Positions 1 to 58,545 of a DNA stretch of 64,000 nucleotides are shown one piece after another. The first letter of the stretch is position 1; each line of letters starts with the position of its first letter. The stretch is from Macrostomum lignano (taxonomy: Eukaryota). Both the position numbers and the translations under genes were made by a program. The stretch lies in contig NIVC01000392.1 of the NCBI GenBank assembly GCA_002269645.1, forward strand, positions 310,001 to 374,000, read 5' to 3'. Under the pieces are notes generated by a model. The model searched no databases, was not told where the DNA came from, and saw only the letters and a list, made by a program, of their open reading frames with translations.

Positions 1-98
<98 letters not shown>

Positions 99-118
99 CA
101 GATAGACAGATAGATAGG

Positions 119-194
<76 letters not shown>

Positions 195-203
195 CAGATA
201 GAC

Positions 204-286
<83 letters not shown>

Positions 287-310
287 CAGATAGACAGATA
301 GATAGATAGG

Positions 311-358
<48 letters not shown>

Positions 359-415
359 CAGATAGATAGATAGATAGATAGGTAGATAGATAGATAGATA
401 GATAGACAGATAGAC

Positions 416-476
<61 letters not shown>
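1..476. repeat. (GATA)n microsatellite with GACA/GGTA variants
   Basis: Direct tetranucleotide periodicity; truncated by the window start. Confidence 0.99.
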
Positions 477-24048: not shown

Positions 24049-27000
24049 ATGGGGACAGAGGTGGAGGTGCAGCTTGAAGATGCTCTTCGAGCTATCAAGG
24101 TGAGTCCATGATATTTTGTTATAATACTTGACTCTTGAGAATTTCTCTGTTAACATTGGAGTTGAATTTGTTTAAATTCTAACCTTTTAGACTGGGGTTT
24201 TACCTGTTATACCGGTGTTTTTACCTGTTAGACTAGGGGTTTTAACTGTTATACCGGTGTTTTACCTGTTAGATTGGGGTGGGTTTTACCTGTTAGACCT
24301 CTGTGTTTTACCTGTTATATTGGTGTTTTACCTGTTAGAATCGGATTCTACCTGTTAGACTGGGTTTTTTCCTGTTAGATTGGGTTGGGTTTTACCTGTT
24401 AGACCTCTGTGTTTTACCTGTTAGACTGGGGTTTTACCTGTTAGAATCGGATTCTACCTGTTAGACTGGGTTTTTTCCTGTTAGATTGGGTTTGGTTTTA
24501 CCTGTTAGACCTCTGTGTTTTACCTGTTAGACTAAGGTTTTACCTGTTAGACCGGTGTTTTTACCTGTTAGACTAGGGGTTTTACCTGTTAAACCGGTGT
24601 TTTACCTGTTAGATTGGGATGGGTTTTACCTGTTAGACCTCTGTGTTTTACCTGTTAGACTGGGGGTTTTACCTGTTATACAGGTGTTTACCTGTTAGAC
24701 TGGGGTGGGTTTTACATGTTAGACTGGTGTTTTACCTGTTAGACTCGAACTGTTACCTGTTAGACTTGAACTGTTACCTGTTAGACTCGAACTGTTACCT
24801 GTTAGACTCGAACTGTTACCTGTTAGACTCGAACTGTTACCTGTTAGACTCGAACTGTTATCAGTTAGACTCGAACTGTTACCTGTTAGACTCGAACTGT
24901 TACCTGTTAGACTTGAACTGTTACCTGTTACACTCGAACAACTGAAATAATTCTCCTAAGATTATATCTAACAAAGACCCACATAAACCCGAACACCGCT
25001 CGCAGGACGAAGCGACCAGAGTTCGATTCGGGGACAACAATTTGTTTCTGGGCGAGGCTGGCGAGCTTCAAAAAGATTTGGAGACTCGCCTCTTCGATAT
25101 AGAGAAGCAGATCTGCGATGGAGTCCGGGTGAGAGTCGTCCATTGAACTTTCAGTGCTTCATGGTACTTGAGCTGCCGATGGCTAGCTGATGTTCAACAT
25201 TGAACCCCTCCCCTTTGCAACCCCAACAGGGCGACACCGAGGCCCGCCTGCTGAAGGAGAGCGAGAGCATCAAAGGCGAGATTCACCAGAACAAGAAGTG
25301 CGTTGGTTATCTGCAGCGGATTGCAGGACTGGAGGACGACTTCACGGTAATGATGGCTGTTACTAGTGCTCTGATATATTCTACTCTGCTCTGTTCCATC
25401 CGACTCAGAGATCTTTTCTACTCAGATCTACTCTACTCTATTCAGATCTACTCTGCTCTACTCTGATCTACTCTACTCTGATCTACTCTACTCTACTCAT
25501 ATCTACTCTACTCAGATCTACTCTACTCTACTCATATCTACTCTACTCTACTCATTTCTACTCTACTCTACTCATATCTACTCTACTCTACTCATTTCTA
25601 CTCTACTCTACTCATATCTACTCTACTCTACTCATTTCTACTCTACTCTACTCATATCTACTCTACTCTACTCATTTCTACTCTACTCTACTCAGATCTA
25701 CTCTACTCTACTCATATCTACTCTACTCAGATCTACTCTACTCTACTCATATCTACTCTACTCAGATCTACTCTACTCTACTCAGATCTACTCTACTCTA
25801 CTCATATCTACTCTACTCAGATCTACTCTACTCTACTCAGATCTACTCTACTCTACTCAGATCTACTCTACTCTACTCAGATCTACTCTACTCTACTCTA
25901 CTCAGATCAACTCTACTCTACTCAGATCTACTCTACTCTACTCATATCTACTCTACTCAGATCTACTCTACTCTACTCAGATCTACTCTACTCTACTCAG
26001 ATCTACTCTACTCTACTCTACTCAGATCAACTCTACTCTACTCAGATCTACTCTACTCTACTCTACTCAGATCTACTCTACTCTACTCATATCTACTCTA
26101 CTCTACTCATTTCTACTCTACTCTACTCATATCTACTCTACTCTACTCATTTCTACTCTACTCTACTCATATCTACTCTACTCTACTCATTTCTACTCTA
26201 CTCTACTCAGATCTACTCTACTCTACTCATATCTACTCTACTCAGATCTACTCTACTCTACTCATATCTACTCTACTCAGATCTACTCTACTCTACTCAG
26301 ATCTACTCTACTCTACTCATATCTACTCTACTCAGATCTACTCTACTCTACTCAGATCTACTCTACTCTACTCAGATCTACTCTACTCTACTCTACTCAG
26401 ATCAACTCTACTCTACTCAGATCTACTCTACTCTACTCATATCTACTCTACTCAGATCTACTCTACTCTACTCAGATCTACTCTACTCTACTCAGATCTA
26501 CTCTACTCTACTCTACTCAGATCAACTCTACTCTACTCAGATCTACTCTACTCTACTCTACTCAGATCTACTCTACTCTACTCATATCTACTCTACTCTA
26601 CTCATTTCTACTCTACTCTACTCATATCTACTCTACTCTACTCATTTCTACTCTACTCTACTCATATCTACTCTACTCTACTCATTTCTACTCTACTCTA
26701 CTCATATCTACTCTACTCTACTCTACTCAGATCTACTCTACTCTACTCAGATCTACTCTACTCTACTCATATCTACTCTACTCAGATCTACTCTACTCTA
26801 CTCATATCTACTCTACTCAGATCTACTCTACTCTACTCAGATCTACTCTACTCTACTCATATCTACTCTACTCAGATCTACTCTACTCTACTCAGATCTA
26901 CTCTACTCTACTCAGATCTACTCTACTCTACTCTACTCAGATCAACTCTACTCTACTCAGATCTACTCTACTCTACTCATATCTACTCTACTCAGATCTA

Positions 27001-30000
27001 CTCTACTCTACTCAGATCTACTCTACTCTACTCAGATCTACTCTACTCTACTCTACTCAGATCAACTCTACTCTACTCAGATCTACTCTACTCTACTCTA
27101 CTCAGATCTACTCTACTCTACTCTACTCTACTCAGATCTACTCAGATCTACTCTACTCAGATCTACTCTACTCTACTCTACTCAGATCTACTCTACTCTA
27201 CTCTACTCAGATCTACTCTACTCTACTCTACTCAGATCTACTCTACTCTACTCAGATCTACTCGACTCTACTCTACTCAGATCTACTCTACTCTACTCAG
27301 ATCTACTCTACTCTACTCATATCTACTCTACTCAGATCTACTCTACTCTACTCAGATCTACTCTACTCTACTCAGATCTACTCTACTCTACTCAGATCTA
27401 CTCTACTCTACTCTACTCAGATCTACTCTACTCTACTCTACTCAGATCTACTCTACTCTACTCAGATCTACTCTACTCTACTCTACTCAGATCTACTCTA
27501 CTCTACTCAGATCTACTCTACTCTACTCTACTCAGATCTACTCTACTCTACTCAGATCTACTCTACTCTACTCAGATCTACTCTACTCTACTCTACTCAG
27601 ATCTACTCTACTCTACTCAGATCTACTCTACTCTACTCATATCTACTCTACTCAGATCTACTCTACTCTACTCAGATCTACTCTACTCTACTCAGATCTA
27701 CTCTACTCTACTCTACTCAGATCTACTCTACTCTACTCTACTCAGATCTACTCTACTCTACTCAGATCTACTCTACTCTACTCTACTCAGATCTACTCTA
27801 CTCTACTCAGATCTACTCTACTCTACTCTACTCAGATCTACTCTACTCTACTCAGATCTACTCTACTCTACTCTACTCAGATCTACTCTACTTTACTCTA
27901 CTCAGATATACTCTACTCTACTCAGATCTGCTCTACTCTACTCAGATCTACTCTACTCTACTCTACTCAGATCTACTCTACTTTACTATACTCAGATCTA
28001 CCCTACTCTACTCTACTCAGATCTACTCTACTGTACTACACTTCTACTGAACGCTACCCTATCCCCCCAGAAACTGATGCACACTGTTATGGCCCGCGCC
28101 AAGGCCATGCGCGACCATCCGCACGGTGACAAGGTGACAAGCCAGGGCGTGACCGACTGCTGGTCGCAGGTGCAGCGGCTCACCGACCTGACCCGCGTGC
28201 ACACCAGAAACGCCTCAGACTATCATCAGTTCTTCTTCGACTACCGGGACACCTTCCTGCTGCTGAAAGACCGCTGGCACCAGCTGGAGCACTGGCTCAG
28301 CGCCTTCTCGCCCAAGCCGATTGTGCGAGAAACCGACTCCATCAAGACCTTCATGCAGAGCCAGCTGTCGGAGTTCCTGTGCCTCTGGCAGCGGGTGCAG
28401 ACTGTGGTGTCTGCTAGCCGGCGGGTTGTGCCAGTGAGTTAGGGCTAGATTAGCAATCCATTCTATTCCTTTATCAATATGATTGGATAGATTAGCAATC
28501 CATTCTATTCCTTTATCAATATGATTGGCTAGATTAGCAATCCATTCTATTCCTTTATCAATATGATTGGCTAGATTAGCAATCCATTCTATTCCTTTAT
28601 CAATATGAATGGCTATATTAGCAATCCATTCTATTCCTTTATCAATATGAATGGCTATATTAGCAATCCATTCTATTCCTTTATCAATATGATTGGCTAG
28701 ATTAGCAATCCATTCTATTCCTTTATCAATATGATTGGCTAGATTAGCAATCCATTCTATTCCTTTATCAATATGATTGGCTATATTAGCAATCCATTCT
28801 ATTCCTTTATCAATATGATTGGCTAGATTAGCAATCCATTCTATTCCTTTATCAATATGAATGGCTATATTAGCAATCCATTCTATTCCTTTATCAATAT
28901 GATTGGCTAGATTAGCAATCCATTCTATTCCTTTATCAATACGATTGGTTAGATTAGCAATCCATTCTATTCCTTTATCAATATGATTGGCTAGATTAGC
29001 AATCAATTCTATTCCTTTATCAATATGAATGGCTATATTAGCAATCCATTCTATTCCTTTATCAATATGATTGGCTAGATTAGCAATCCATTCTATTCCT
29101 TTATCAATACGATTGGTTAGATTAGCAATCCATTCTATTCCTTTATCAATATGATTGGCTAGATTAGCAATCCATTCTATTCCAATTTATCTATATATGA
29201 TTGGCTAGATTAGCAATCCATTCTATTCCAATTTATCTATATATGATTGGCTAGATAAGCAATCCATTCTATTCCAATTTATCTATATATGATTGGCTAG
29301 ATAAGCAATCCATTCTATTCCTTTATCAATGCGATTGGCTAGATTAGCTATCCACATAGTCCATAAAAACATTCATCATCCCTACACCCAGGTGCAGCAG
29401 AGACTCGAACCCACCCGACAGCCCCGGCCGGCCCTGCTGCTGTGCCCATTCGAAAACTCGATCGGCCGATTCGAGGAGGGCACCGAGCTCACCCTGCTTG
29501 ACAACTCGGACAGTCTGCTCTGGCGGGTCTCCTACGAGTCTGAGGATGGCGAGGCAGCCAGCTTCGACGTGCCTTCTATCATGCTGTGGCTGCCTCCGCC
29601 TGATCTCGGCGCGACTGAGCTGGCGCTGAAGTGAGTAGAGTATTCTCCCTATAAAAATTCTCCCCAGTTCTAAAAGAAATTCACCCTCTTCTTTGAAAGA
29701 AAATAAGGATTCCCCAGTTATTGAATCGAATTCCCCAATTATTGAATCGAATTCCCCGATTATTGAACCGGATTCCCCAATTATTGAATCGGATTCCCCA
29801 ATTATTGAACCGGATTCCCCAATTATTGAATCGGATTCCCCAATTATTGAATCGAATTCCCCAATTATTGAATCGGATTCCCCAATTATTGAATCGGATT
29901 CCTCAATTATTGAATCGGATTCCCCAATTATTGAATCGGATTCCCCAATTATTGAATCGAATTCCCCAATTATTGAATCGGATTCCCCAATTATTGAATC

Positions 30001-33000
30001 GGATTCCCCAATTATTGAACCGGATTCCCCAATTATTGACTTGGATTCCCCAATTATTGAATCGGATTCCCCAATTATTGAATCGGATTCCCCGATTATT
30101 GAACCGGATTCCCCAATTATTGAATCGGATTCCCCAATTATTGAATCGGATTCCCCAATTATTGAACCGGATTCCCCAATTATTGAACCGGATTCCCCAA
30201 TTATTGAATCGGATTCCTCAATTATTGAATCGGATTCCCCAATTATTGAATCGGATTCCTCAATTATTGAATCGGATTCCCCAATTATTGAATCGGATTC
30301 CTCAATTATTGAATCGGATTCCCCAATTATTGAATCGGATTACCCAATTATTGAATCGGATTCCCCAATTATTGAATCGAATTCCCCAATTATTGAATCG
30401 GATTCCCCAATTATTGAATCGGATTCCTCAATTATTGAATCGGATTCCTCAATTATTGAATCGGATTCCCCAATTATTGAATCGAATTCCCCAATTATTG
30501 AATCGGATTCCCCAATTATTGAATCGGATTCCTCAATTATTGAATCGGATTCCCCAATTATTGAATCGGACTCCCCAATTATTGAATCGCATTCCCCAAT
30601 TATTAAATTGGATTCTCAATAAATAAATTGGATTCTCCCTTTATTAAATTGGATTCCCTTATCAATTGCTTGGATTCCCTAAGTACTGAATTGGATTCCC
30701 CATTTATTAAATTGAATTTTCCAAATATTGAACTCGATTCCCTCTTTATTAACTTGTATTCTCCCGTATCGACTCAAATTTCCCCATTATTGACACGGAT
30801 TCCCTAATACCAAATTTAGGCATCTTATTCTTTCATTCCAACCCAAATTCCCATAATAAACAGGATTCCCCCATTCCAACTGAGATTCCCAGTTCAAATT
30901 TGTTTTATTTTATCTTGTTCTAAAGGGATTCCCCGATCCCAAAAAAAGAATTCCCCTGTCTCAAACGTGATGATTTGTCATTCCGCAGGCTGGAGGAGAA
31001 ATTCCTGTCTCTCTGGGGCAGCTCAGCGGCCCGGTTCCAGACGGTGCTGTGCGACTACCTCACCTTGCTCTTCCGCCACCTGTCCGCTCACGACTACGCC
31101 GAATTTGAGAGTCCCGAGCAATGGCAGCTGCTCAAGCAGGAGGTGTATAATATCTTTGGAGACGACGATCGGTTCCGTTCGGTGCTGCAGACCCTCGCTC
31201 AGTTGGACCGACGCAACGACCCGTCGAAACGCGGCTCGAGGAAGCGAGTGCTGCTCAAAGAGGCTGAAATTGTGCAGCTGAGGAGCCTGCTGGCCAAGCT
31301 GGAGTCGCACATCAAGTACTGGGAGTCGTTCCGTCGCCAGTCTCTGGCCGTGCGCGGCTCCGAGTACTGGCTGACTGAGCTGGACTGCTCCAAGCCTGAG
31401 CTGCATAATTCCATCGCTCTGCTAGAGTGAGTATTGAGCATAGTTTTGGATGGTGTTGAGCAGCAGTTCCTTCATCAAGTCCGCAAACAATTTGCATTTA
31501 CAAATAGTCAGCTCTCAGATGATTAGCAATTACATACATCTCGAAATCAATCATCAATTATTATGTCAATCAATCATAAATCAACAAATCATCAATCAAT
31601 CATAAATAAAAAATCAGTCATCAATCATCGATCAACAAATTAATGAAGAAATCATCAATCAATTTCCAAGCAATCATCAATCAATCACGAATAAAACATC
31701 AATCGATAAATCAATCAAGAAATCATCAATCAATCACCAATCAATCATCAATCAATCAAAAAACCAATCAAGCAATCATCAATCAATCAATAAGTTATCA
31801 TTATCAACCAATGAGCTATCAATCGTCAGTCAACAGCCATCAAAGATGCATAATACATCACCAGACAGTCGGTAGCAACCCATCTAGCCAGCAATGCAAT
31901 CGCTATTCCGCAGGACTCTCCAAGCCAGCGGCCAGGAGCAACTGGAGTCGCTCTTCGCCAAACTGAACGCTTGGCGAGCTGGCCAGGCTGCCGAACAGCG
32001 CCGCCACGTGCGCAAGCTGCGCCGCCAGGAGGTGCTGATGTCCGCTCATGCGGCTACCGGCGGCGACACTGTCGCGGGGCTTCTGCAGTTCCAGCTGCCG
32101 TCGCAGCGTGCCCGTCAGTCCGAGTTCAACGAAGCCGCCGCTGCCGGCCTACGACAGGCGGGCGTCGACGAGGCCCGCTGGAGCGAGCTGTCTTCGGTAG
32201 CCTCGTCCTCCGCCCGCGAAAGTGTCGCCGACAACGTCGTCGGTCGCCAGTGGCTGCAGCAGCACTCGCGCGGTCTGCAAACTACTCAGGCCGGCACTCG
32301 CGAGGCGGCGTTGCAGACTACGGAGCGCAGCGTCGGCCGCCGGGCGGAGCACGGCATCCAAACGCAAATCGCGGCCAGCCAGCAGCATCACGGAATTCAG
32401 ACTGGCTTCGCCACGGCCGACTCGAGCGTTACAGCGCAGCAACCCTCAGCTATGGAGCACGGAATTCAGACCGTGGGAGTCGGCGGTGGCTTGTTGAGTT
32501 CGGCGGTGTCTCAGCGCCTGGTCACGGAGCACTCGGGTAGTCAGTTCGACAGCGAGCGGGCGGACCACGGCGTTCAGACTCGGTACTCTACCAGCGACAC
32601 GCTAATGCTGAGCACACGGCTGCCAGCCACCCAATCGGGCAGTCAGTACAGCCAAGTCGAAGGTCGAGAGCACGCCATCCAGACGATGCCGGACTCCGGA
32701 GAGGCCAGCGCGTTCTTTCAAGTCGCGACGGAGGAGCAAAGCCTGAGCCAAATCGACCACGCCATCCAAACGTCTTGGGCGCTTAAGGACACCGCTTTGG
32801 AGTTCTCTGGACCAAGAATTGTCGAAATCGACTTGGACGAAGACTGGCAGACGGAGGAAAAGGTGCGGGCGGTGAGTCAGCCGGTAGATGCTACGGACAG
32901 CGTCAATTGGCTGAAGCACCTGGATACGGAGGAGCTCCGAGCTGAACTGCAGCAGAGGCTCATCCTCAGAGACAGAAGCTGCCAAGCAGGTTTGCAGACC

Positions 33001-48000: not shown

Positions 48001-51000
48001 AAGGAATATGAAACTGTGGGCGTCAACCAAAAGCCTTCGATAGATTCAGCTTCAACCTGCTGTGAATGCGAAATCGACGATGCCTGTGCTCAGACTGACG
48101 AAGAAAAGAAGAGTGAGATGCATGATTCGATTGCTCAGTATGAGTTGTCTATGGAATTCGAAAGCATTCAAACCCAGATTGATACCACAGACGCTGAGAA
48201 TGAGTACGACCAAGGCGAAGAGGGCGAAGAGGAGCCTGTGCCGACAACTCATGCACAATGTCAGACACGCAACGATATGAAATGCTTCGGTACAAGTTTC
48301 GATAGCGTCGCCATGCACGAGGCTTGCGTTAAAGCAGCCGAGCCAGTGCCAGAGAAGACTGACGCGTCAACACAGAGTGTTGTTCAGTGCCAAATGGAGA
48401 GCTCGTCGGGCACTGTTAACTATATGGAAGACTATGGTAGCCAAGTTGATCTGGTGACCAATAGCATCGCTACGCAAGTTGAGAAGCAAGCAACGACTGA
48501 ATCAGCTATTCAGATCAAACTTGAAAAGACTACCGAAGTGACTGAGTTTGGAACCCAATCAAGAAGCTTTATGGTGGATTCATCGAGTCAAATTTTAGTT
48601 GGCACGACCGATAGTTTCACGCAGAGTAAAGAGGTAGATAAATCCAGTATTGGCGTCACTGCTGACTTTTCTAAGGCGCCAGAATGCTCCGAAATTGGTA
48701 CACAGTCGAGAAGCTTTATGACTGAAGAAGGCTCTCAGCTCTCCGTGCATGCAACTGAAGCGGGTACACAGTGCGAACTGTCGAATATCGAGACTGGTTG
48801 CGTAAATGTAGGCGCCGAAATGAAAACCTGCACTACTCAATGCATCTCCGAATCAAATGAATTTGGCACTCAGCATCGAATTGATGTATCCGAAGCAACT
48901 ACACAGAGCCATAGTAAGCCTGTCTGGGAGAGCTCAGTCTGTGTTAACTTGATTCAGAGAAAAGAAATGACTGATCGCGGCGCTCAGTGCCGAAACAATC
49001 TAATTGAGTCTGGCTCCCAGCATGGCTTGAAATCTGTAGACATCGACACCTTGACTATGAGCAGAAGCACTGCTGAGGCTTCCGTCACAGCGGAATACAT
49101 CGAAGAAGCAGTCGAAGTGGCAGAGGAAGCAACTCAATCACGACAGGTTATGTGTGACGAAGGGTCTCAACTGCTAGTGCAAGTAACAGACGTCTCCACC
49201 CAGTATGAGGCCGCCATCAAGTGCAACGCCGCAGTCAGAATAGCCGAGATTAAGGTTACCCAGTCGGTTGGATGTCAGAAAGAGACTCCAGTAGTCGATG
49301 AAAACGAGCAGTGCTCTACTTCGCTAACTGACTCAGGCACTCAACAGTCGTTTGAATATATCACTCAGTCCATAGTAAGTCCTCGACTTGAACAAACTAG
49401 TAGCTCCATGTCAGCCAGGTGCAGTTCAAGCGATTGCGGGACGGAAACACGTCCTCTTGGAATAGAAGCCGGCACAGAGTACTTAATGGAGAGCACTGAC
49501 TCTGGGGTCAGCAATTCTAAGAAGGCAGTTAATAGCAGCATGCAGATAGTAACTCTTATTAGTCAGAAGGACCAAGAGATCCAAACTGAGACGGAAGATA
49601 CAACAGATGGATCGGATGTAGAAGAGAAGATTGAGGAATCTAAATGCCACCACGAAACTGTAGAAATTATTGAGGAAACGACTTCAAAGTCTGAGAAGCC
49701 AGTCTACTCTGAAGGAGCATTTGTGTTAAACCACAAGCGGAAGATGCAAGCTGCCAGCATGAAGAAGAGCCATCTGTTCGCTTGGTAACATCTGTGACAC
49801 CTGCTGTGTCTGGCATGAACTTTTCTTATCAACTTCCCGTTGAGACCACCCAGACGTGTCGGGTTCCGATGATAGACTCGACGACTCAATACCAATCCGA
49901 ACTTTACGAATCATCGATGGCGTCATTCTGTTCGAAGGTCCCCATGGAAGAGCAAGGCTGTCAGACAGGTGGGGAGAGCATAAACAGTTTCGCTCGAACG
50001 CGCACCGAGATGGTTTCGACAGAGAGCTCTTACAAACTGGAGCGAGCGGAGGGCTTTGCCAGAGCATTCATTAGTACAGCTGACGCAGAAGTGAAAAAGC
50101 TACTGTTGGAATCCGAGACCATCGATATGAGCACGGAAACTGAAGTTCGAGTGAATTCAGTGCAAACATCATATGCATTGGTTCTGCAGGACGCTGGTGT
50201 TCAAATAGGTAAACAGTATGCCGACAGTGAAGTTTATGTCCAGCCTGTCGAAGAAGAAAAACCGGACCTGGCTGTGTCTGGCATCGCTGTTCGAGGACCT
50301 ACCAGCTCAGTACAGACAGCTTACGACTTGTCTTTAGATGACGCTGCTACCCAAGTGTCTACCGAGCTATTGAATTCCAGTGTGGTTGTGACGCCAACTA
50401 TCACAGAGACAACCGAAATCGAAATAGAAACGAGTTCGCACATGCAGTCTAGCGAATCCTCCTACGATCTGGATACAAATTCAATCGGCATCTTGTGTTC
50501 ATCTGAGTTAGAGAGTGTCGATACCCAAACCATAACTGATCGGAAAGATGCAGAAATGATGACGGAATCCGAAGCCAAGAAAGAATATGACAATAGCAAT
50601 ATGCAGCACGCTGAACAGAGAAACAATTTCGACGCTAGCACTGAAACTGAAATTAGGAAGCGCTCGGTTGAAAGTCAGTACATCCGCGAGCTGGCTAACA
50701 GTGAGACGCAGATTGCTAGCGAAACCTGCGATACTTCCGTCTGGGTGCAAGAGATCAAGGTAGAAACAACTAATGCCTTGACGGAAACGGCTCCGAATAT
50801 GGTAGAAGTAGAAACTAGTTACAATACTAGTATGGCGTCTGTTGATTGTCAGTCTGGCGTAGCTCACGCTAATGCCAACATCCAAGCCTTGGAAGTTCAG
50901 CCTGAGACAACAGACTCAAGCATTCAAACAATGGACGCAGACGTGAACGAATTAGCTGCGCAGACAGAGGCAGCTGCAATCTTAGAAGATGCCGTTGTGG

Positions 51001-54000
51001 CTACCAAAGTCGATACCAAATCGGACGCCTCATTCTTTTCTGTACCCCTTCAGGACGGCAGTACGCAAGCTAGTCGCGAATTTGACAGTGCCGGAGTAAA
51101 AATAGCCGAGACCCCAGTTGAAAAACTCGACGTCTCAGTAGAAACGAAAATCAATGCCAGAGAGGTGTCCGTACAAGCCTCTAGCGAATCGATGAGTGCG
51201 AACGTCTGGGCAGCAGAGGAGCCCATTGAAAAGGAAATCGCTTCAGTTCAAACGAGCAGCAGATTGGATTCGTCTGAGACGCAGTATAAGCTGCTTGTTG
51301 ATGATTATGAATGTCAGGCCTCAGAGGAGGCTGTCATCACAGTCGATTCATCCATTCGGGCTGTTGTTTCATCAGTTTCGGTGGAGACACTGTGCGAATT
51401 AGGCTTAGTTGACAGTTCCTCCCAAGCAGCCGTTGATTTAGTCGACGCTTGCGCTCGCGCTGAAGAGGAGCCTATAAAGAAATCCGAAGCTTCCTCGGAG
51501 ACTGCAGTCCGCAAGCAATCTACTGAAACTATGTACCATTTAGAGCAGCAAGATTCTTCTGTTCGAACATTCACTGAGCAGCAAGACGCTTCTGTGCAGG
51601 TAGAGTCAGAAAGAATCGAGTGTTTGGAGGCGTACACGGAAACACAGCCGAAAATGCGCGAGGTCGAAACGGATTTTACTGTCCCAGTGAACTCCGTTCA
51701 ACTTGAGGCGACCATTCCAACCAAGGATGACAACATGTCAGTCAGAGAAGCAGTTGTTAAAACTAACGATGCAGCGATCGAAACTAAAGTATCTGTGAAA
51801 TGTGTTGAAGTGCAAGCATGCCCTGACTACACCGAATCGGATGCTCAAGTTCACGAGACTGTCGCTGAAAAGGCTGAGGTCACAACTGAAACAGTGCGAA
51901 GAATGGTCTCAGTTGAGTCCTCATACTCTGTGAGCGTCCAGTCCGTGGGAACTTCTTCCACAGAAACCAGCACAAGCGACATGGCAACCCAAGTGAAAAT
52001 GAATATTTCTGATGTACAAGTCCAGACTGAGGAGGAAGTTATTAAATCTATCAACTCAAATGTGCAGATGCACGTCGATACTAACTCTTGTGAGACATCG
52101 TATAGCCTGAGAACGGTTGAAAGTTCTACTCAGGCATCTACGGAAACGGATGAATCCTTAGCGAAATTCGAAGAAGAAGTCATCGTGACAGAAAAGACTG
52201 ACGCATCCACTTCTTACAGCCTGCGAACTAGCAACAGCGAAGTTCAAGTCTCTTGCGATCATTCTGATGTAAGTGTGCAAATTGAAGAAGCAAAGATTGA
52301 AACGTGTGAAACTTCAATCAAGGCGGAAGTAAGTACAAAATCGGTGGAAACTGCGTACGTGATGAGATTAGCCGATGTGCAATCACAGGCTTCTATGGAT
52401 CAATGCGATGCAAGTGTCAGGATTGCAGAAGAGGCTGTAAAAACAGTTGAAAGCAGTTGCATGACAGAGAGAATTCTTGTTTCAACATTGTCGCTGTACC
52501 ATATCCCAACTGAGCACACTGGCTCCCTAGCATCTACAGAGTATAGTGACGGGGATGTGCAAGTTGAAGAGTGTAAAGTAGAACTTGTGGTCACTGGTAT
52601 CGCTGTTTCAACAGCGTCTGTAAGTGACAGCCAGGTTCAAACCGCTGAAGTGTATACTACCTCGAATGTTAAGGCAGTGGAGCCAGTGCCAGATAAGCTG
52701 GACGCAGCTATAGCAGCTACCGTTGAGATGAAGTCTACTGACTCATTATACTACCTCAGACTGATGGACTCCGATTCTCAGGCATCAACCCAATCAGACA
52801 ATGGGTCAGTACACGCCGAAGAGGCTATTGTTGAAAGGCTAGACGCCAGCGCTCAAATCCAGGCTGACTGTCGCACCGTTGAGACATCCTACGAAATCAG
52901 ACGGAGCGACTCGTCCTCCCAAGCATCGGTGGCCTTCGCAGATAGCATCTATATTGTAGACAAAATCGAGCAAGTTAACAGCTTTGTATTAGCAACTGAA
53001 CCGGTGAAATCTACAGCGGAGAAAGAAGTGGACGTGAAGACTCAGACTGAATCAACTAACATGAGGCACCAAGTGCCTTCTCTCGATGGTTTTGTTCAAC
53101 CATTAACTGAGTATTGCGACTCCGACACTTTTATTGAAGAAGTGATTGAAGAGATCCGAAAGCCTAAAGAGGAAGCGAAAATGAAATCAAAAACTGTGGC
53201 CAGCTTCTATGAGGTTCGAGTTGAGAGCAGAAGCGCGCAAGCTTCAACCGAAACTGATGAAGTCACTGTGTTGCACCGAGAGCTCAAGCCTGACCTTATT
53301 AATAGTGATATCAAAGTCTCTGCTTCTACAAAGACCGCAGACGCGCAGTACGGTTTGCGGTTGAGCGACGGAGAAGCACAGGCTTGCATTGAACTGTGTA
53401 ATTCAAACATGAAGTTCGAAGAAAAGATCATAGCGATCGAAAAGTTGGATGCCGCCACACTTTGCACCGGTCCGACAATGGAGCAAGGTGGTGTTAGAGC
53501 TACTCCATCTACAAAGGCCACAGACTGTCAGTACGGTTTGAGACTGAGCGATGGACAGACACAAGTTTCCAACGAGCTATGTAATGCTAATATCCAAATC
53601 GAAGAGAAGATTGCTGTGATTGAAAAGTTGGATGCTGCTACTCTCTGCACCGGGCCAAGAGTGGAGCACAAAGCAGTCCACATGTCAACGCAACAACTCG
53701 ATCAGAGCATCCAAGCAACGGAAGAAAGGCCTCAACAAGTGGAGAGTGGAATTAAGGCCAGTGTAGTGACAGCAACTGATTCTGGAGTGCAAGTTTCCGC
53801 TTCAGTCTCAAATGCAAACGTTCAGTTTGCAGAAGAGATTGTGGTTATAAAAAAATGTGACGCAGCAACGACATATAGCCGTCCAACTGGCGAGAGAGAG
53901 GTGCAAGTTTCGAGTGATCAATGTCACGCAAACGTGCAAGTTCACGAAGCAGCAATCGAAACTGGCGAGGCTTCAGTCAAGGCAGCAATTAGTACAAAAT

Positions 54001-57000
54001 CTGTTGAAACAGAGTACACTTTAAGACTGATAGAGAAGAACTCTCAGGCGTCGATGGATGTGGACAATGCGAATGTCAGGATCGCTGAAGAATCCATAGA
54101 GACAGCAGAAAGCAGCTTTAAGTCACAGAGCAGCCTCGTGTCCACCTCATCCCTGTACAATATCCGTACTGAGCACAGTGAAGTTCAGGCATCCAAGGAA
54201 TTCACTGAGACAGTAACACATGTGCAGGAAGCCAAAACTGAGGTTGCTGTTAGCGGAATCAGCGCTGCAGTCAGCACGGAGACAGTTGAAACAGGATACT
54301 CTATCAGATTAGCTGACGCACAGAGCCAAGCATCAGCTGACACAAGCGAGACAAGCGTCCAAATCTCAGAAGAGTCTGTCGAGACAGACGAATACAGTTT
54401 CAAGACGCAGAATAGTCTGATTTCAACTTCGTCACTCTATGCTATCAGAACAGAACACAGCCAATCTCAAGCGTCGAAGGAGTTTATCGATGGAGCCGTT
54501 CAAGTCCAGGAAGCTAAAATCGAAGTAGTTGATAGCGGAATAAAAATTTCAACAGAATCGCACGAGGCCTGCGCTATCTTTAAGGAAGAGGTTGCCAAAG
54601 CGCAGGATACTCGAGAAGTACAGGCGTCATTTGAGAAGCTCGATGACCATGTTTACGTTAAGGAATCGAAGACACAAACAGTCCAAAGTGAAGTTAAAGC
54701 AGCAGTTGATACCAAATCTGTCGACACTTCTTACGGCCTTCGCCTATCTGACAAGGAGGTTCAAGCTTCCAGAGAATATTGCGAAGTTGATGTAAAAATC
54801 AAGGAAGAGGCAACTGTCAAGAAGACATCGGATGCTTCGACCTTATACAGTCTGCGCACAGAGCACGTAGAAGCGCAGGCTTCAAAGGTCTATCAAGACG
54901 ACAGCCTGCAAATAAAAGAAGCGATGGTTGAGTCAGTTGACGGAGAAGTCAAGTCTGAAGTGAGCGCCCGGTCAACAGAGACACTATATTCCTTGAGACT
55001 GGCTGATCAAAGCTCACAGGCTTCAATGGAGCTAAACAACTCGAGCGTCAAAATTACGGAGGAAGTTGTGGAGACTCGAGAGAATAGTTTTAAAACACAA
55101 AGCAGCTTGAGATCAACTCATTCTTTGTACAACATCCGCACAGAGCACAGTGCGTCTCAAATTTCTCGCCAGTTTGTAGATGCAAACGTGCAAGCGAGAG
55201 AGTTATCAAGGGTTTCTATGATTCCAGGCAGTATGAAAGCTCGCGCAGTGTCAGTCGTCAGCAGTCAGATGAAAACGGCAGTTAAACTGACAGACTCGTG
55301 GGTAAATGTTTCTTCATCCAGGGCAGGTTTCAGACCAGAGGCCCAGAGCAGGGCGACTCAAATCGATCAGGGTGATTTCATTGAGATTGAAGAATTTCCC
55401 ATGCAGCAAACGACTCAAAGATTTGAGCATGCCATTCCAACGGTCAATGAGTCTAGTCAAACAGACGAAATCGAGTTTGAAACATCCGGGCGCCCTGTAC
55501 AGCATCCACACCTAGAAGACGTTGGAGCAACATTTGTACCAGACTCCAGGGCAGTCAGCTGTCAAATGACTGTGCCTGTTGTAGAGAACGGAATCTTCCG
55601 CAACACGTCCAGCCGCACACTTTCAACTCAAGTCGAGTTTTTCGATGTTCCGGACGGCGCCCCTCGATCTCCGAGTGTTCGAAGCAGTCACCGCCACAGT
55701 CACAGTCATTCAGTTTCTAGAGACACAGGCAGCCTTCTTGAGATCGTGTCTAAAAACCAAATTATACGATGCGCGCCAAATTCTGCCAATGCTCTGGTGG
55801 TAACCTCGTCGCGAGCGAAAGACTCCGGTTCAATTCACTTTCCTCGCGAAGAGGACAGCGAGCAAATCCAGGAGCAACAACTGACAGGTGCTCAAACCTC
55901 CGAGCTATTCCCGCCGCGTCACGGCTTCGTGGTAACCGGAGCCAAGTCGAGTCTGTCAGAGGAGGCTCAGGTCAGACAGGAGGTCGCTAGGCGTGGCACT
56001 TCCAGCGGTACGGATACGCACGGTCTGGTTGATTCCGCGCACAAGCAAATCCGAGTTCGACCTGATTACTACGATGCCAATGTAAGAAGCGCGTATCCGA
56101 CTGAGCTTCCAATGCAGCAGCAGCAGCAGCAGCAGCAGCAGCCCAGGCGGACTCTTGAAGCGGCGTTTGCCATGACTGATACAGACGTGATTGATCGCGT
56201 CAGATCCAGCGCCTCTCCGCAGCTGCGCTTGGCCCTGCTGCAGATGCTTCGGCCAGCAACAAGCGACGCGTCGACGGATGCCAAGTTGATTGGAGCGGAG
56301 CAGCAGCAGCAGCAGGAGCCGGAAATGCTGCAACAATTGCAACAACAGTACCAACAACCAATCCAACGAACTCAGGCGCCTTCGACATCATACGTGCAGC
56401 GACAAAACATGGAGACTAGCAGCCAGACGGACCGGCTTACGGAGGCCGATTTTGAGGCTTGGGCGTCGCAGAGTCTTGGCAGAAAAGTCCGCATTAGTCT
56501 TGAGACGCCAGAAGAGTCGCGGTGAGCGCTTTAACGTCTTTTGGGTGCTTTGGGGGAAGCATTGGTTTGAAGTATTTTGCAGTAAAATATCGAATCAAAT
56601 TAGAAAGCTGTATAAGAAAAATCATAAATGAGCCTCAATTTTTGAATTTCACCGAACCGCGGCACCGTCTAGCCGGCTTGAAATGCTGTACGGCCCAAGC
56701 GGTAGCCCAGACCATCTACCGAGGAGTTGGTAATTAGTTAATCTAGATTTTAGATATCACTATATCCATTTTTCTATCCAATTTCTATATAATTGGCGTA
56801 AATTCAAGTTAAAGTATATAGCTTAAAAACTTTTCCTTCACTATTTTTTCAATTACTATCACACCCAATCTTTTTATGCTACTAATAACGTGAAACTGTC
56901 TCAAAACTCAATGGCTTACTAAACATGTGTGTAGCTTGTCATTTCCGCTGCTGAAAATCTGAAACAAAAAAATTCTTCATTCGACTGGCTCTCCATCCCT

Positions 57001-57227
57001 CTTGATTCAGGCCGCAGCAGCAGCAGCTTCAGCGAATTGTCGAGACGGACATCGAACGCGTTGTTGATCCGGAGAGCAAGCTGCCCATGAAGCCGGGTGT
57101 GGCTATTCGACTCAAAATTCTGTCGGCAGACTGCGGCCAGTATAAATTAGCCGATGGTACTTTCATCTCCGCCGCGGAAGCTGTAGATCGCGGCTTCATC
57201 CAGCTGAGGTCGAGTCGGAAGCAGTGA
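24049..57227 (+). CDS. Giant plakin-family cytolinker, ~8,660 aa (plakin domain with SH3, huge repetitive rod, C-terminal plectin-like repeat)
   Basis: Exons 24049-24099, 25006-25128, 25230-25346, 28071-28433, 29392-29630, 30989-31426, 31914-39731, 39894-56521, 57011-57227. Phases are consistent once four 1-nt deletions are corrected (25,998 nt). Plakin hallmarks: HTRNASDYHQFF, LLCPF...EGTELTLLDNSDSLLWRV...VPSIMLWLPPPD..A..LA.KLE (SH3 insert in spectrin repeat). The C-terminus VVDPESKLPMKPGVAIRLKIL...GQYKLADGTFISAAEAVDRGFI resembles plectin repeats. No CH actin-binding domain is seen. The start codon is the least certain part. Confidence 0.82.
24188..24935. repeat. ~20-21-bp minisatellite with TTACCTGTTAGA core, plakin intron 1
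   Basis: ttttacctgttagactggg variants grade into ttacctgttagactcgaactg. Confidence 0.93.
25375..28035. repeat. (CTACT)n pentamer satellite interrupted by CAGAT/CATAT/CATTT units, plakin intron 3
   Basis: ~2.6 kb of 5-bp periodicity with higher-order duplications. Confidence 0.98.
28445..29350. repeat. 42-bp minisatellite (GATTGGCTAGATTAGCAATCCATTCTATTCCTTTATCAATAT), ~21 copies, plakin intron 4
   Basis: Direct periodicity; gives the spurious 14-aa repeat ORF on the minus strand. Confidence 0.97.
29707..30620. repeat. 21-bp minisatellite (CCCCAATTATTGAATCGGATT), ~43 copies with a decayed tail to ~30960, plakin intron 5
   Basis: Direct periodicity; gives the spurious IESDSPI / LLNRIPQ ORFs. 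Confidence 0.97.
31543..31800. repeat. Degenerate (ATCA)n / AATC-rich tract, plakin intron 6
   Basis: Repeated atcaatca. Confidence 0.8.
31914..39731 (+). CDS. Giant exon A of the plakin (7.8 kb): QYxLFxSDKD repeats, then 12 DSSGQY repeats
   Basis: Acceptor ttccgcag at 31913 (phase 2). ORFs 31894-38031 and 38028-39821 join by a 1-nt deletion near 37960-37965. Candidate donor GTTAGT at 39732. Confidence 0.8.
39894..56521 (+). CDS. Giant exon B of the plakin (16.6 kb): 39-aa, GCP-motif, Cys-rich 125-aa and degenerate ~40-aa repeats; polyQ near the end
   Basis: Acceptor ctttcttatcag at 39893. ORFs 39906-40739, 40721-46213, 46312-49788 and 49782-56525 join by 1-nt deletions at ~40704, ~46206 and ~49720. 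Donor GTGAGC at 56522 (phase 2). Confidence 0.8.
57011..57227 (+). CDS. Terminal plakin exon encoding a plectin-repeat-like module
   Basis: Acceptor cttgattcag, phase 2 matching the upstream donor; translates PQQQQLQRIVETDIERVVDPESK...AAEAVDRGFIQLRSSRKQ*. Absent from the ORF track because it has no start codon. Confidence 0.8.
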
Positions 57228-57993
57228 AATACGCTTTGACAACTCTATTAACCCGACGCTAAAATGATTGCAAATTCATTCATGCTTATTGTTGATTAAC
57301 TATTGCCGATTCTATTTAACACGACTTATTTTGGACCTCATTTTTTCGGGTCAAGGTACAATTTATTTTGTTATTATTTGTGTTTTACGGTTGGGTTGGA
57401 CTAAGAATTTTGTAGACAAAAAATGACATTTTCGTTATTTGGACCCACGACAACAATTTTAAATGATTCTATGTTAAGGAAAACTACAATGCGCATGTAG
57501 TGCGAGAAGATTATAGTATCCGATCAACCAATTAAAAAGATTAAAACGTCAATACTTCTTAGTCCAGTTGACCGAACAACTTAACCCAAGATTTGTTATA
57601 AACTACTCCTTACTGAAAACTAAAATTTTTATTCGCTACTCATATGCTGTCTACCTGTGTAAACCATTATTAATATATCGCTTTGATATGCAGTATTCAG
57701 TGTTAAGTTATGTAAGCCTGACTTTAAGCTCATTTGTATTTGGTGTATTGGTTTAGCCTGGATTGTGAGAACCATATAGTAAACGTATTTTTGTTATTTA
57801 TAACCCACCAAAAGTCGTTTAAAGCCTCATTGATAACCTCAATTCATTAACTAATATCTCATTCTGCGTCATTTCGATATTTGTTTAAAACTGTTTAAAA
57901 ATAAAAATTTATCACTGATTAGTACTATATGAGCTAATAAGACATTTTAAGTGCATTTTTGTCTGTTGTTTTAATCACAATATACTAAATCTC

Positions 57994-58545
<552 letters not shown>

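What the first reader, a model, noticed from the sequence alone, without database searches (positions are those of the whole stretch)
24049..57227. Giant ~8,660-aa plakin with an unprecedented-looking architecture
Seen: a CH-less plakin domain (~440 aa, 6 small exons), then ~8,100 aa encoded by two giant exons (7.8 and 16.6 kb), then one plectin-like repeat. Known plakins link the plakin domain to PRDs with a coiled-coil rod (plectin, desmoplakin) or spectrin repeats (spectraplakins). Here the linker is an acidic, S/T/Q-rich mosaic of at least six different repeat families, with no heptad or spectrin signature that I can see. This looks like a new cytolinker class. It could serve intermediate-filament anchoring in epidermis or adhesive anchor cells (speculative).
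Basis: partly seen in the sequence, partly recalled or inferred. Interest (0 to 1): 0.8.

Follow-up and report, generated by a model that had tools for sequence, protein, structure and literature searches.

The report
Giant rod-less flatworm plakin gene
This is a real gene of the flatworm Macrostomum lignano for a roughly 8,700-residue cytoskeletal linker of the plakin family, in which an acidic, probably unstructured repeat region replaces the usual stiff rod; it belongs to an unstudied flatworm-wide family that databases list only as hypothetical proteins.

Summary
Six small GT-AG exons (24049-31426) encode a 444-aa plakin domain with no CH domain (Pfam SH3_10 E=3e-11; desmoplakin 3R6N E=1e-13). 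They splice into a 24.6-kb coding stretch (31914-56521) and a 217-nt last exon ending at 57227. The repaired product is 8,720 aa.

Corrections:
- The middle is one giant exon, not two. A sister copy reads straight through 39.8 kb.
- In this window it is broken by five small frameshifts and one in-frame TAA. The lesions I could compare are private to this copy and mostly in homopolymers, so they are most likely assembly errors.
- The gene is already public as truncated "hypothetical proteins" (PAA83991.1, PAA53624.1, PAA75311.1).
- It has M. lignano paralogs and homologs across parasitic flatworms (e.g. Schistosoma Smp_073450) with the same layout.

The middle shows no heptad periodicity and no Pfam domain. 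AlphaFold confidence is low, and the net charge is about -650. I found at least six repeat families. The C-terminal plakin repeat is only weakly supported.

Function as a junction-to-filament tether with a giant flexible spacer is inferred, not shown. It is a new variant of a known kind, of moderate interest.

The parts
24049..24099 (+). Exon 1: start codon and the first 17 codons (MGTEVEVQLEDALRAIK)
   Evidence: ATG in gccATGG context with donor GTGAGT. The public models P0092, P0001 and P0093 have the same start.
25006..25128 (+). Exon 2 (41 codons), plakin domain
   Evidence: AG/GT borders and phase 0. Identical in the public models.
25230..25346 (+). Exon 3 (39 codons), plakin domain
28071..28433 (+). 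Exon 4 (121 codons): spectrin-like repeat of the plakin domain
   Evidence: Aligns to desmoplakin 3R6N and plectin 3PE0.
29392..29630 (+). Exon 5: the plakin-type SH3 domain
   Evidence: Pfam SH3_10 E=3.2e-11, 43.6 bits against a cutoff of 22.8. Borders.
30989..31426 (+). Exon 6: the last spectrin-like repeat of the plakin domain
   Evidence: The split codons on both sides are consistent.
31914..56521 (+). Giant exon (24.6 kb, about 8,205 codons after repair), encoding the acidic repeat mosaic
   Evidence: Only one frame is open at any point. Acceptor ttccgcag|G at 31914 and donor CG|GTGAGC at 56521. pN/pS against the sister copies is 0 to 0.42 across six segments.
33019..34602 (+). Repeat family A: units of about 35-45 aa, 'TQYVLFQSDKDL...RDASLQAS'
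   Evidence: Self-comparison and an iterated profile that finds 35 units between aa 813 and 2665. DNA coordinates were computed from protein positions.
34603..38741 (+). Repeat family B: 12 units of about 110 aa with the core 'LMKDSSGQYYL..G..VTESEA..L.SSEKNIVARV'
   Evidence: AlphaFold2 gives the core a strand-strand-strand-helix-strand arrangement at pLDDT about 65 and linkers below 50. Not related to plakin repeats.
37980..37980 (+). Lesion 1: a 1-nt deletion (CCC to CC in GTCC(C)TGAC) that shifts the frame and truncates the public model at 2,482 aa
   Evidence: Both sister loci carry the extra C. P0001 and P0093 read '...DFTVQTHQPQVPDSKQ'.
39813..39865 (+). Lesion 2: a 49-nt partial tandem duplicate in place of 7 nt (net +42) that puts TAA 39819-39821 in frame
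   Evidence: L001 reads 'TTQVEHVDGAATSKR' straight through.
40441..41141 (+). Repeat family C: six units of 117 nt (39 aa). It contains lesion 4 at 40705 (AAA to AA).
   Evidence: TRF. Sister units have ACCAAACC. L001 has three more units.
41147..43837 (+). Repeat families D and E: modules carrying the motif K-x-[IV]-Q-x-G-[CSV]-P
   Evidence: The motif occurs 13 times against 0.45 expected from shuffles. TRF finds 228-nt and 138-nt units.
45830..48426 (+). Repeat family F: about seven units of 114-125 aa (342-375 nt). It contains lesion 5 at 46207 (GAAACT to GAACT).
49729..49731 (+). Lesion 6: a frame shift (frame 0 to 2) somewhere in 49713-49785, placed provisionally at TTAAACC
   Evidence: No sister sequence is available to fix its position.
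50016..55202 (+). Repeat family H: about 30 units of about 47 aa, 'SVETxYxLRLxDxxSQAS...VxIxEExVET'
   Evidence: Autocorrelation peak at lag 47. An iterated profile finds 30 units. AlphaFold2 mean pLDDT is 34.
57011..57227 (+). Last exon (71 aa plus the stop TGA at 57225-57227): a module resembling a plakin repeat, '...VVDPESKLPMKPGVAIRLKILSADCGQYKLADGTFISAAEAVDRGFIQL'
   Evidence: Acceptor ttgattcag|G. The same junction and stop appear in public model A0A1I8FKW0. Weak similarity to true plakin repeats.

Best explanation
The locus is one of three near-identical genomic copies of a Macrostomum lignano gene for a giant plakin-family protein without CH domains (about 8,720 aa).

Shown:
- An N-terminal plakin domain (spectrin-like repeats with an embedded SH3) encoded by six small exons.
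- One giant exon of about 24.6 kb encoding a strongly acidic mosaic rich in S, T, Q, E and V. It holds at least six internally repeated families and has no coiled-coil or spectrin signature.
- A short last exon.
- The small frameshifts that could be compared (37980, 40705, 46207) are private or homopolymer-associated, so they are most simply long-read assembly errors. The TAA at 39819 comes from a 49-nt partial duplicate and could be a real lesion of this copy. The exon is under purifying selection between the copies.
- The protein belongs to a flatworm-wide family with this same layout.

Inferred: it works as a cytolinker.
- The plakin domain docks the protein on a membrane junction complex, as in desmoplakin, BPAG1e and plectin.
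- The C-terminal plakin-repeat-like module contacts a filament system, probably intermediate filaments.
- The 8,200-residue polyanionic, largely unstructured middle acts as a very long flexible tether or spring instead of a rigid rod. Its repeated short motifs (K-x-I-Q-x-G-C-P, T-Q-Y, Q-T) may be multivalent binding sites.
For: Gene model:
- GT-AG exons with consistent phases.
- They are identical to public models PAA83991.1, PAA53624.1 and PAA75311.1. The last junction is in A0A1I8FKW0.

Plakin domain:
- SH3_10 E=3e-11.
- Desmoplakin 1e-13 and plectin 4e-7.

No CH exons:
- A same-strand AidB-like acyl-CoA dehydrogenase gene ends at about 20.2 kb, and nothing CH-like lies between 20.2 and 24 kb.
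- The same upstream neighbour is present in both sister loci.
- All flatworm homologs start at the plakin domain.

Coding constraint:
- pN/pS ranges from 0 to 0.42 across six comparisons (summed 57 synonymous against 45 non-synonymous differences).
- Away from contig ends, indels between copies are 3 nt or whole repeat units of 117 nt (the 235-nt gap is two units plus the 1-nt shift). The exceptions are 1-nt changes private to one copy, in C3, G4 and C5 runs.
- Sister repeats show AAA where the window has AA.

The middle is not a rod:
- No Pfam family.
- Leucine is 1-8.5% against 13.7% in the plakin domain, and there is no 3.5/3.6 periodicity.
- AlphaFold2 mean pLDDT is 50 and 34, with almost no helix.

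C-terminus:
- The last 176 aa hit only proteins with true plakin repeats among about 120 plakin-domain proteins (E=1.3e-6 and 8.8e-5).
- hhalign against true plakin repeats gives 92% probability.
- In the homologs, plakin-repeat-like hits sit at the C-terminal end and score better than in any shuffle.
- Pfam Plectin scores 19.4 bits in Smp_073450.

Family: 91 hits to the N-terminus, the best ones all flatworm proteins with long repeat-rich tails.
Against: - All function is by analogy.
- The window copy as assembled has an in-frame TAA created by a 49-nt partial duplicate. This is not a typical homopolymer error and could be a real lesion of this copy.
- Membership of the C-terminal module in the plakin-repeat family is weak. 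There is no Pfam hit on the window protein and no significant PDB hit. The hhalign sets were both chosen with a shared motif, which inflates the score.
- The AlphaFold2 runs used only 11 internal repeats as the alignment, so low confidence is not proof of disorder.
- Both sister contigs end inside the exon, so only this window shows the full length.
Confidence: 0.62

Rival explanations
1. This copy, or the whole trio, is a decaying pseudogene. The frameshifts and the TAA are real, and only a truncated protein (2,482 aa or less, as annotated) is made, or none at all.
For: There are five frame shifts and one in-frame stop in 24.6 kb. The 49-nt partial duplicate at 39.8 kb is not a simple homopolymer error. 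The public models are truncated at these sites.
Against: Each 1-nt lesion that could be compared is private to one assembled copy and lies in a homopolymer. Shared indels are multiples of 3. Errors pile up at the ends of the sister contigs. pN/pS is 0 to 0.42. No nonsense substitution occurs in about 8,200 codons. The frame stays open for 14 kb beyond the TAA, across the four remaining 1-nt shifts.
Confidence: 0.15
2. The middle is not a passive disordered spacer. It is an array of small folded modules (for example the roughly 50-aa family B core or the K-x-I-Q-x-G-C-P modules) forming a segmented, titin-like extensible rod or a multivalent docking platform.
For: The family B core is predicted as strand-strand-strand-helix-strand at pLDDT about 65. 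There are conserved aromatic, glycine and cysteine positions. Blocks D/E and H show strand-like hydrophobic periodicity of 2.0-2.3 residues. The K-x-I-Q-x-G motif is conserved in neodermatan homologs.
Against: Overall pLDDT is 50 and 34. Foldseek finds no match. The regions are highly charged and rich in S and T. The centre has no detectable similarity between flatworm homologs, which suggests loose constraint.
Confidence: 0.2
3. The plakin exons and the giant exon (or parts of it) are used in separate or alternative transcripts, so the 8,720-aa product is only one of several isoforms, or a rare one.
For: Spectraplakin genes are known for isoforms that skip giant exons; in Drosophila tendon cells the shot plakin-repeat exon is treated as an intron (PMC2173965). 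One public model skips part of the C-terminal tail.
Against: Three public models join exons 1-6 directly to the giant exon. Splice phases fit only this joining. I found no alternative downstream exon in the window between 31.4 and 57 kb.
Confidence: 0.2

Closest known systems
Uncharacterised flatworm 'Desmoplakin SH3 domain-containing' giant proteins: Schistosoma mansoni Smp_073450 (XP_018655544.1, 3,717 aa), Calicophoron daubneyi CAL8085208.1 (3,915 aa), Sparganum proliferum BHF70669.1 (4,221 aa), and M. lignano paralogs such as A0A1I8J7Z8 (4,370 aa)
   Same: - An N-terminal plakin domain without CH domains, aligned over almost its full length at 27-29% identity.
- Thousands of residues of lineage-specific repeats enriched in QT, TQ and related dipeptides, with K-R-I-Q-x-G motifs.
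- A C-terminal module 'G..I.SA.EAFYRG' that aligns with the window's 'GTFISAAEAVDRGF'.
- No Pfam domain other than SH3_10, apart from a sub-threshold Plectin hit and one unrelated hit (Peptidase_M17_N_1) in Smp_073450.
   Different: - The window protein is about twice as long.
- Its central repeats have no detectable sequence similarity to theirs.
- It keeps only one C-terminal plakin-repeat-like module, where the neodermatan proteins have 2-4.
Epithelial plakins without CH domains: desmoplakin and BPAG1e (also envoplakin and periplakin)
   Same: - No CH domains.
- The plakin domain with SH3 is the best structural match (desmoplakin 3R6N, E=1e-13).
- Filament-binding plakin repeats are expected at the C-terminus.
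   Different: - Those proteins have a central coiled-coil rod of about 900-1,000 aa that dimerises them (general knowledge). Here the centre is about 8,200 aa and acidic, with no heptad signal.
- Those proteins carry one to three globular plakin-repeat domains of 4.5 repeats each. Here there is one weak repeat.
- The desmoplakin N-terminal head is absent.
Giant plakin-repeat isoforms of the spectraplakins Drosophila Shot and C. elegans VAB-10A
   Same: - A single giant exon at the point where the protein stops resembling plectin (10,497 nt in shot), with no coiled-coil rod.
- Products of comparable size (Shot up to 8,846 residues).
- VAB-10A ends in plakin repeats (PMC2173965).
   Different: - Those proteins have CH domains at the N-terminus, and Shot also has spectrin repeats, EF hands and GAS2. 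None is present here.
- Their giant exon encodes recognisable plakin repeats (33 in Shot). A profile built from true invertebrate plakin repeats finds only three marginal matches in 8,720 aa here, and family B is unrelated.

Membership tests
Plakin family (sensu lato) | A plakin domain: spectrin-like repeats with an embedded SH3 domain (Pfam SH3_10) | tested here: met
   SH3_10 E=3.2e-11, 43.6 bits against a cutoff of 22.8. Residues 108-318 align to desmoplakin 3R6N (1.1e-13) and plectin 3PE0 (4e-7).
Plakin family (sensu lato) | Plakin (plectin) repeats, Pfam PF00681 | tested here: inconclusive
   Against: no Pfam hit on the window protein even at E<=10, and PDB searches are not significant.

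For: the last 176 aa hit only plakin-repeat-bearing proteins among about 120 (1.3e-6 and 8.8e-5). hhalign gives 92% probability, on biased sets. A plakin-repeat profile hits 8698-8714 at E=0.021 against 0.18 or worse in 20 shuffles. The homolog Smp_073450 scores 19.4 bits against a cutoff of 20.5.
Desmoplakin/plectin/BPAG1e type plakins | A central alpha-helical coiled-coil rod | tested here: not met
   z at 3.5/3.6 residues is between -3.3 and +1.9 in all central blocks, against +3 in the plakin-domain control. Leucine is 1-8.5%. AlphaFold2 shows almost no helix. No dedicated coiled-coil predictor was available.
Spectraplakins (MACF1, dystonin, Shot, VAB-10) | An N-terminal pair of calponin-homology domains (actin-binding domain) | tested here: not met
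   No CH hit in any plus-strand open stretch of 1-24048. An unrelated same-strand gene ends at about 20.2 kb. The public models start at the same ATG.
Spectraplakins (MACF1, dystonin, Shot, VAB-10) | A spectrin-repeat rod, EF hands and a GAS2 domain | tested here: not met
   No Spectrin, EF-hand or GAS2 Pfam hit in any of the six large open stretches or in the last exon. The gene ends at 57227, with a minus-strand channel gene downstream.
Flatworm giant plakin-domain proteins without CH domains (Smp_073450-like; an informal family) | An N-terminal plakin domain without CH, a multi-thousand-residue repeat centre rich in Q and T, and a C-terminal 'I.SA.EA..RG' module | tested here: met
   Full-length N-terminal alignments at E 1e-23 to 1e-42. 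Shared dipeptide and K-R-I-Q-x-G motif enrichment. The C-terminal module aligns.

The most novel reading that the evidence does not exclude
Flatworms possess a distinct class of plakin cytolinkers. In it, the dimerising rod has been replaced by a multi-thousand-residue polyanionic, intrinsically disordered repeat region. This region would act as an entropic spring or spacer, with a contour length of up to about 3 micrometres, between junctions and filaments. The conserved K-R-I-Q-x-G-x-P motif would be a previously unknown, repeated binding site for a cytoskeletal partner. Such a protein might be a major component of the intracellular 'cell web' that supports the cuticle-less flatworm epidermis or the neodermatan tegument.
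Probability: 0.3. Interest if true: 0.65.

Novelty: new variant of a known kind. Interest (0 to 1): 0.45.

Why it matters
Plakins are the textbook linkers between cell junctions and the cytoskeleton. All characterised ones use a coiled-coil rod, spectrin repeats or arrays of plakin repeats as the body of the molecule.

A conserved flatworm family that keeps the junction-targeting head and a vestigial filament-binding tail, but builds its body from fast-evolving acidic low-complexity repeats, would show a different physical solution: a flexible, highly charged tether rather than a rod.

The family is present in schistosomes, liver flukes and tapeworms, and it looks flatworm-specific in its central region. 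It could therefore bear on tegument mechanics in parasites.

There is also a practical point. The public models of this gene are truncated at assembly indels. Correct full-length models are needed before any expression or RNAi work.

Tried and rejected
1. Family B as diverged plakin repeats. I suspected that the core 'LMKDSSGQYYL..G..VTESEA' was a diverged plakin repeat. A profile search of the PDB gave only chance hits. hhalign against true plakin repeats gave 1.6% probability. A plakin-repeat profile did not hit the block. Rejected.

2. Many GT..AG pairs of length 3n exist by chance, but none has the GTRAGT donor or ttccgcag acceptor pattern of the real introns. The sister locus reads through in frame. 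Rejected.

3. CH-domain exons upstream. A Pfam scan of all plus-strand open stretches in 1-24048 found none.

4. The word-indexed protein search with the N-terminus found nothing. Only the exhaustive search worked.

5. The Foldseek search with the family B model found no match with E below 0.85. The model is too uncertain.

6. A common origin of repeat families A and H. hhalign gave 9.5% probability, so this is not supported. Families A and B do share one profile.

7. Similarity of the central region to any of about 120 plakin-domain proteins. None was found at E<1e-3.

8. Literature. No paper in the searchable library mentions the locus tags, Smp_073450, or plakin, plectin or desmoplakin together with Macrostomum.
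Full report
WHAT IS THERE

On the plus strand, an ATG at 24049 (context gccATGG) opens six small exons: 24049-24099, 25006-25128, 25230-25346, 28071-28433, 29392-29630 and 30989-31426. All have AG/GT borders, mostly GTGAGT donors, and phases that fit only this joining.

Together they encode 444 aa. Exon 5 is a plakin-type SH3 domain (Pfam SH3_10, E=3.2e-11, 43.6 bits against a cutoff of 22.8). Residues 108-318 align to the solved plakin domains of desmoplakin (3R6N, E=1.1e-13) and plectin (3PE0, 4e-7).

Exon 6 splices with a split codon into a very long coding stretch that begins at 31914 (acceptor ttccgcag|G) and ends at the donor CG|GTGAGC at 56521. A last exon, 57011-57227, ends in TGA.

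After repair of the frame breaks described below, the product is 8,720 aa.

THE MIDDLE IS ONE EXON, AND IT IS BROKEN IN THIS ASSEMBLY

In fact the 24.6 kb consists of six open stretches in three different frames. The breaks are:
- a 1-nt shift at 37980;
- a stop, TAA, at 39819-39821;
- further 1-nt shifts near 39947, 40705, 46207 and 49730.

Sister repeat units within the window show that two of these are AAA to AA changes. At 40705, three other units have ACCAAACC. At 46207, four other units have GAAACT.

WHERE IT COMES FROM

The exhaustive protein search with the N-terminus returned a 100% match. The cluster look-up showed that the organism is Macrostomum lignano.

The gene exists in three near-identical annotated copies. 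All are called 'hypothetical protein' by NCBI and 'Desmoplakin SH3 domain-containing protein' by UniProt:
- PAA83991.1 (2,482 aa), which is exactly my exons 1-7 read up to the first frameshift;
- PAA53624.1 (2,730 aa);
- PAA75311.1 (4,042 aa).

I fetched the two sister loci (L001 and L002). Both contigs end inside the giant exon, so this window is the only place where the whole gene is assembled.

THE BREAKS LOOK LIKE ASSEMBLY ERRORS

Compared with the sister loci, the giant exon differs by only 0.4-0.5%.

Away from contig ends, the indels between copies are 3 nt or whole 117-nt repeat units (one 235-nt gap is two units plus the 1-nt shift at 40705), so they keep the frame. The exceptions are single-base changes, each private to one copy and each in a homopolymer:
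- the window lacks a C of CCC at 37980;
- L002 lacks a G of GGGG at window position 38442, which is what truncates PAA53624.1;
- L001 lacks a C of CCCCC at window position 42377, which is what truncates PAA75311.1.

More 1- and 2-nt errors accumulate in the last kilobase or so of the two sister contigs.

Synonymous differences outnumber non-synonymous ones per site. pN/pS ranges from 0 to 0.42 across six segment comparisons, with 57 synonymous and 45 non-synonymous differences in total. Well-aligned internal repeat pairs give dN/dS of 0.07-0.34.

This is the pattern of a constrained coding exon with long-read indel errors, not of a decaying pseudogene.

The break at 39.8 kb is different. The window has a 49-nt partial tandem duplicate where L001 has 7 nt. 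The net change of +42 nt keeps the downstream frame, but the insert itself is out of register and carries the TAA. L001 reads 'TTQVEHVDGAATSKR' straight through, so there is no intron here and the ancestral state is one giant exon. No candidate GT..AG pair around the TAA resembles the gene's real splice sites. Whether this duplicate is a misassembly or a real lesion of this copy cannot be decided without reads.

BOUNDARIES OF THE GENE

Upstream on the same strand lies an AidB-like acyl-CoA dehydrogenase gene (about 16.8-20.2 kb; Pfam AidB_N, Acyl-CoA_dh_M, Acyl-CoA_dh_1 and ACDH-11_C). The same gene is the upstream neighbour in both sister loci.

No CH-domain signal exists in any plus-strand open stretch upstream of 24049. 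Minus-strand amiloride-sensitive channel (ASC) genes flank the region at 10.6-13.3 kb and 59.9-60.6 kb.

All flatworm homologs also start at the plakin domain. 'CH-less' is therefore supported.

The last splice junction (…PEESR|PQQQQ…) and the stop are reproduced in an independent public model, A0A1I8FKW0.

THE MIDDLE

Self-comparison shows distinct repeat blocks:

| Family | Protein residues | Units |
|---|---|---|
| A | about 813-1340 | about 35-45 aa, 'TQYVLFQSDKDL…RDASLQAS' |
| B | 1340-2720 | twelve units of about 110 aa, core 'LMKDSSGQYYL…IVARV' |
| C | about 3290-3545 | six units of 39 aa |
| D/E | about 3524-4420 | modules with the motif K-x-[IV]-Q-x-G-[CSV]-P, 13 copies against 0.45 expected |
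| F | about 5085-5950 | about seven units of 114-125 aa |
| H | 6481-8209 | about 30 units of about 47 aa |

A smaller family lies at about residues 5950-6250. One profile unites families A and B. Families A and H are not demonstrably related.

Several lines argue against a rod:
- No Pfam family matches any part.
- Serine plus threonine is 21.5%, and glutamate plus aspartate about 17%. The net charge is about -650.
- Leucine is 1-8.5% per block, against 13.7% in the plakin domain.
- Hydrophobic periodicity at 3.5/3.6 residues is absent in every central block (z from -3.3 to +1.9), whereas the plakin domain, used as a positive control, gives z=3. Blocks D/E and H instead show a 2.0-2.3-residue periodicity, although in H this may partly be a harmonic of the 47-residue repeat.
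- AlphaFold2, given the internal repeats as its alignment, produced a mean pLDDT of 50 for two family B units. The core is strand-strand-strand-helix-strand at about 65, and the linkers are below 50. For three family H units the mean pLDDT was 34, with no helix.
- Foldseek found nothing for the family B model.

The caveats are that the alignments were shallow and that no dedicated coiled-coil predictor was available.

THE C-TERMINUS

Pfam does not call a Plectin repeat in the window protein. A direct PDB sequence search is empty.

Indirect evidence is positive but modest:
- Against about 120 plakin-domain proteins, the last 176 aa hit only two. Both carry plakin-repeat motifs in the matched region, and for P0036 Pfam confirms true plakin repeats (Plectin E=2e-72). 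The hits are P0036 at E=1.3e-6 and P0041 at E=8.8e-5, in register with four successive repeats of P0036.
- The reverse search places the best match in the 8,720-aa protein on the last exon.
- A profile of true invertebrate plakin repeats hits the C-terminal ends of the flatworm homologs at E from 1e-5 to 1e-2. It hits residues 8698-8714 of the window protein at E=0.021. The best of 20 shuffles is 0.18.
- hhalign of the flatworm C-terminal module against true repeats gives 92% probability and P=6e-7. Both sets were picked with a shared S..EA..G motif, which inflates this value.
- Smp_073450 scores 19.4 bits on Pfam Plectin, against a cutoff of 20.5.
- A profile of the neodermatan C-termini lists desmoplakin's repeat domain (5DZZ) only at E=0.63.

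I call this feature inconclusive but leaning positive.

My own idea that family B is made of diverged plakin repeats failed.

RELATIVES

The N-terminus finds 91 proteins. The best are:
- M. lignano paralogs (for example A0A1I8J7Z8, 4,370 aa);
- homologs from Dibothriocephalus, Sparganum (4,221 aa), Calicophoron (3,915 aa), Schistosoma mansoni Smp_073450 (3,717 aa), Echinococcus, Hymenolepis, Clonorchis and Dicrocoelium.

They share four features:
- a plakin domain without CH domains;
- thousands of residues of repeats enriched about twofold in QT and TQ;
- occasional K-R-I-Q-x-G motifs;
- a C-terminal module 'G..I.SA.EAFYRG' that aligns with the window's 'GTFISAAEAVDRGF'.

Those scanned carry no Pfam domain other than SH3_10, apart from the sub-threshold Plectin hit and one unrelated hit (Peptidase_M17_N_1) in Smp_073450 and one unrelated small hit in P0025.

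The central regions themselves show no detectable similarity between species or paralogs, so they evolve fast. One Echinococcus member is named 'microtubule actin cross linking factor 1'. The cluster representative I scanned has no domain other than SH3_10.

HOW IT PROBABLY WORKS (INFERENCE)

By analogy with desmoplakin, BPAG1e and plectin, the plakin domain should dock the protein on a membrane junction complex, and the C-terminal repeat-like module should contact intermediate filaments. M. lignano has cell-type-specific intermediate filaments, for example macif1 in anchor cells (PMC4016567).

The polyanionic, largely unstructured centre of 8,200 residues would act as a very long flexible tether, spring or spacer. 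It might also be a multivalent platform through its repeated motifs. None of this was tested here.

The adhesion papers I checked do not mention any plakin.

COMPARISON WITH WHAT IS KNOWN, AND NOVELTY

The closest characterised architectures are of two kinds:
- the epithelial plakins without CH domains (same head and polarity, but with a coiled-coil rod and globular repeat domains);
- the giant plakin-repeat isoforms of Shot and VAB-10A.

In Shot, a 10,497-nt exon lies at the point where the protein stops resembling plectin, and products reach 8,846 residues. VAB-10A ends in plakin repeats (PMC2173965).

What is different here, and across the flatworm family, is that the giant exon does not encode recognisable plakin repeats, spectrin repeats or coiled coil.

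The gene is already deposited, but only as truncated hypothetical proteins. I found no paper on the family. I therefore rate it a new variant of a known kind, with moderate interest (0.45).

Noticed in passing
window 16800-20211 (+): A multi-exon gene for an AidB-like acyl-CoA dehydrogenase (Pfam AidB_N, Acyl-CoA_dh_M, Acyl-CoA_dh_1, ACDH-11_C). It lies directly upstream on the same strand, and the same gene is the upstream neighbour in both sister loci.
   Followed up: partly
window 10645-13343 (-) and 59901-60578 (-): Two genes or gene fragments for amiloride-sensitive sodium channels of the DEG/ENaC family flank the plakin gene on the opposite strand (Pfam ASC: E=1e-43 for the 499-aa ORF, 5e-9 for the downstream one).
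   Followed up: no
window 24182-24848, 25409-28037, 28443-29354, 29707-30742: Four of the six introns inside the plakin-domain region are filled with a satellite array of their own (units of 86/106 nt, 20 nt, 42 nt and 21 nt). The 2.6-kb array in intron 3 is open in all three frames and could be mistaken for coding sequence.
   Followed up: partly
window 1-476, 3030-5181, 5677-6858, 18796-19517, 20700-21874, 22323-23038, 57992-58546: There are many further micro- and minisatellites: (GATA)119, a 17-nt unit in 130 copies, a 28-nt unit in 42 copies, CTCCT in 146 copies, a 20-nt unit in 59 copies, a 16-nt unit in 46 copies and (TCTG)140. The 20-nt array at 20.7-21.9 kb aligns in many registers to the sister locus, so its copy number probably differs between copies.
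   Followed up: no
window 41147-43837 (protein residues 2943-4406): The short motif K-x-[IV]-Q-x-G-[CSV]-P-[FWY] recurs 13 times against 0.45 expected. It also occurs in the neodermatan homologs (KNKRIQRGRSFISG in Schistosoma, KNKRIQRGPSCISW in Calicophoron, CKRIQAGYPSLHP in Sparganum). It may be a conserved binding motif of unknown partner.
   Followed up: partly
L001 and L002 (NIVC01000890.1, NIVC01003053.1): Both sister contigs of the public assembly end inside the giant repetitive exon, and 1-2-nt indels accumulate in roughly their last kilobase. The three public protein models are each truncated at a different indel.
   Followed up: yes
P0127 (UniProt A0A1I8FKW0), equal to window 55.6-57.2 kb: The public C-terminal fragment is named 'SH3 domain-containing protein', but Pfam finds no SH3 or any other domain in this region. 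Its model also skips about 90 residues of the Q-rich tail.
   Followed up: no
P0030 cluster (Echinococcus CDS37468.1 and CDS19412.1): The Echinococcus homologs are named 'microtubule actin cross linking factor 1'. The cluster representative I scanned (P0030) has only the SH3_10 domain and no CH, spectrin or GAS2 domains. The name is probably wrong.
   Followed up: partly
window 9060-9620 (+): Overlapping open stretches give a weak winged helix-turn-helix hit (HTH_29, E=0.003). This may be a transposase remnant.
   Followed up: no
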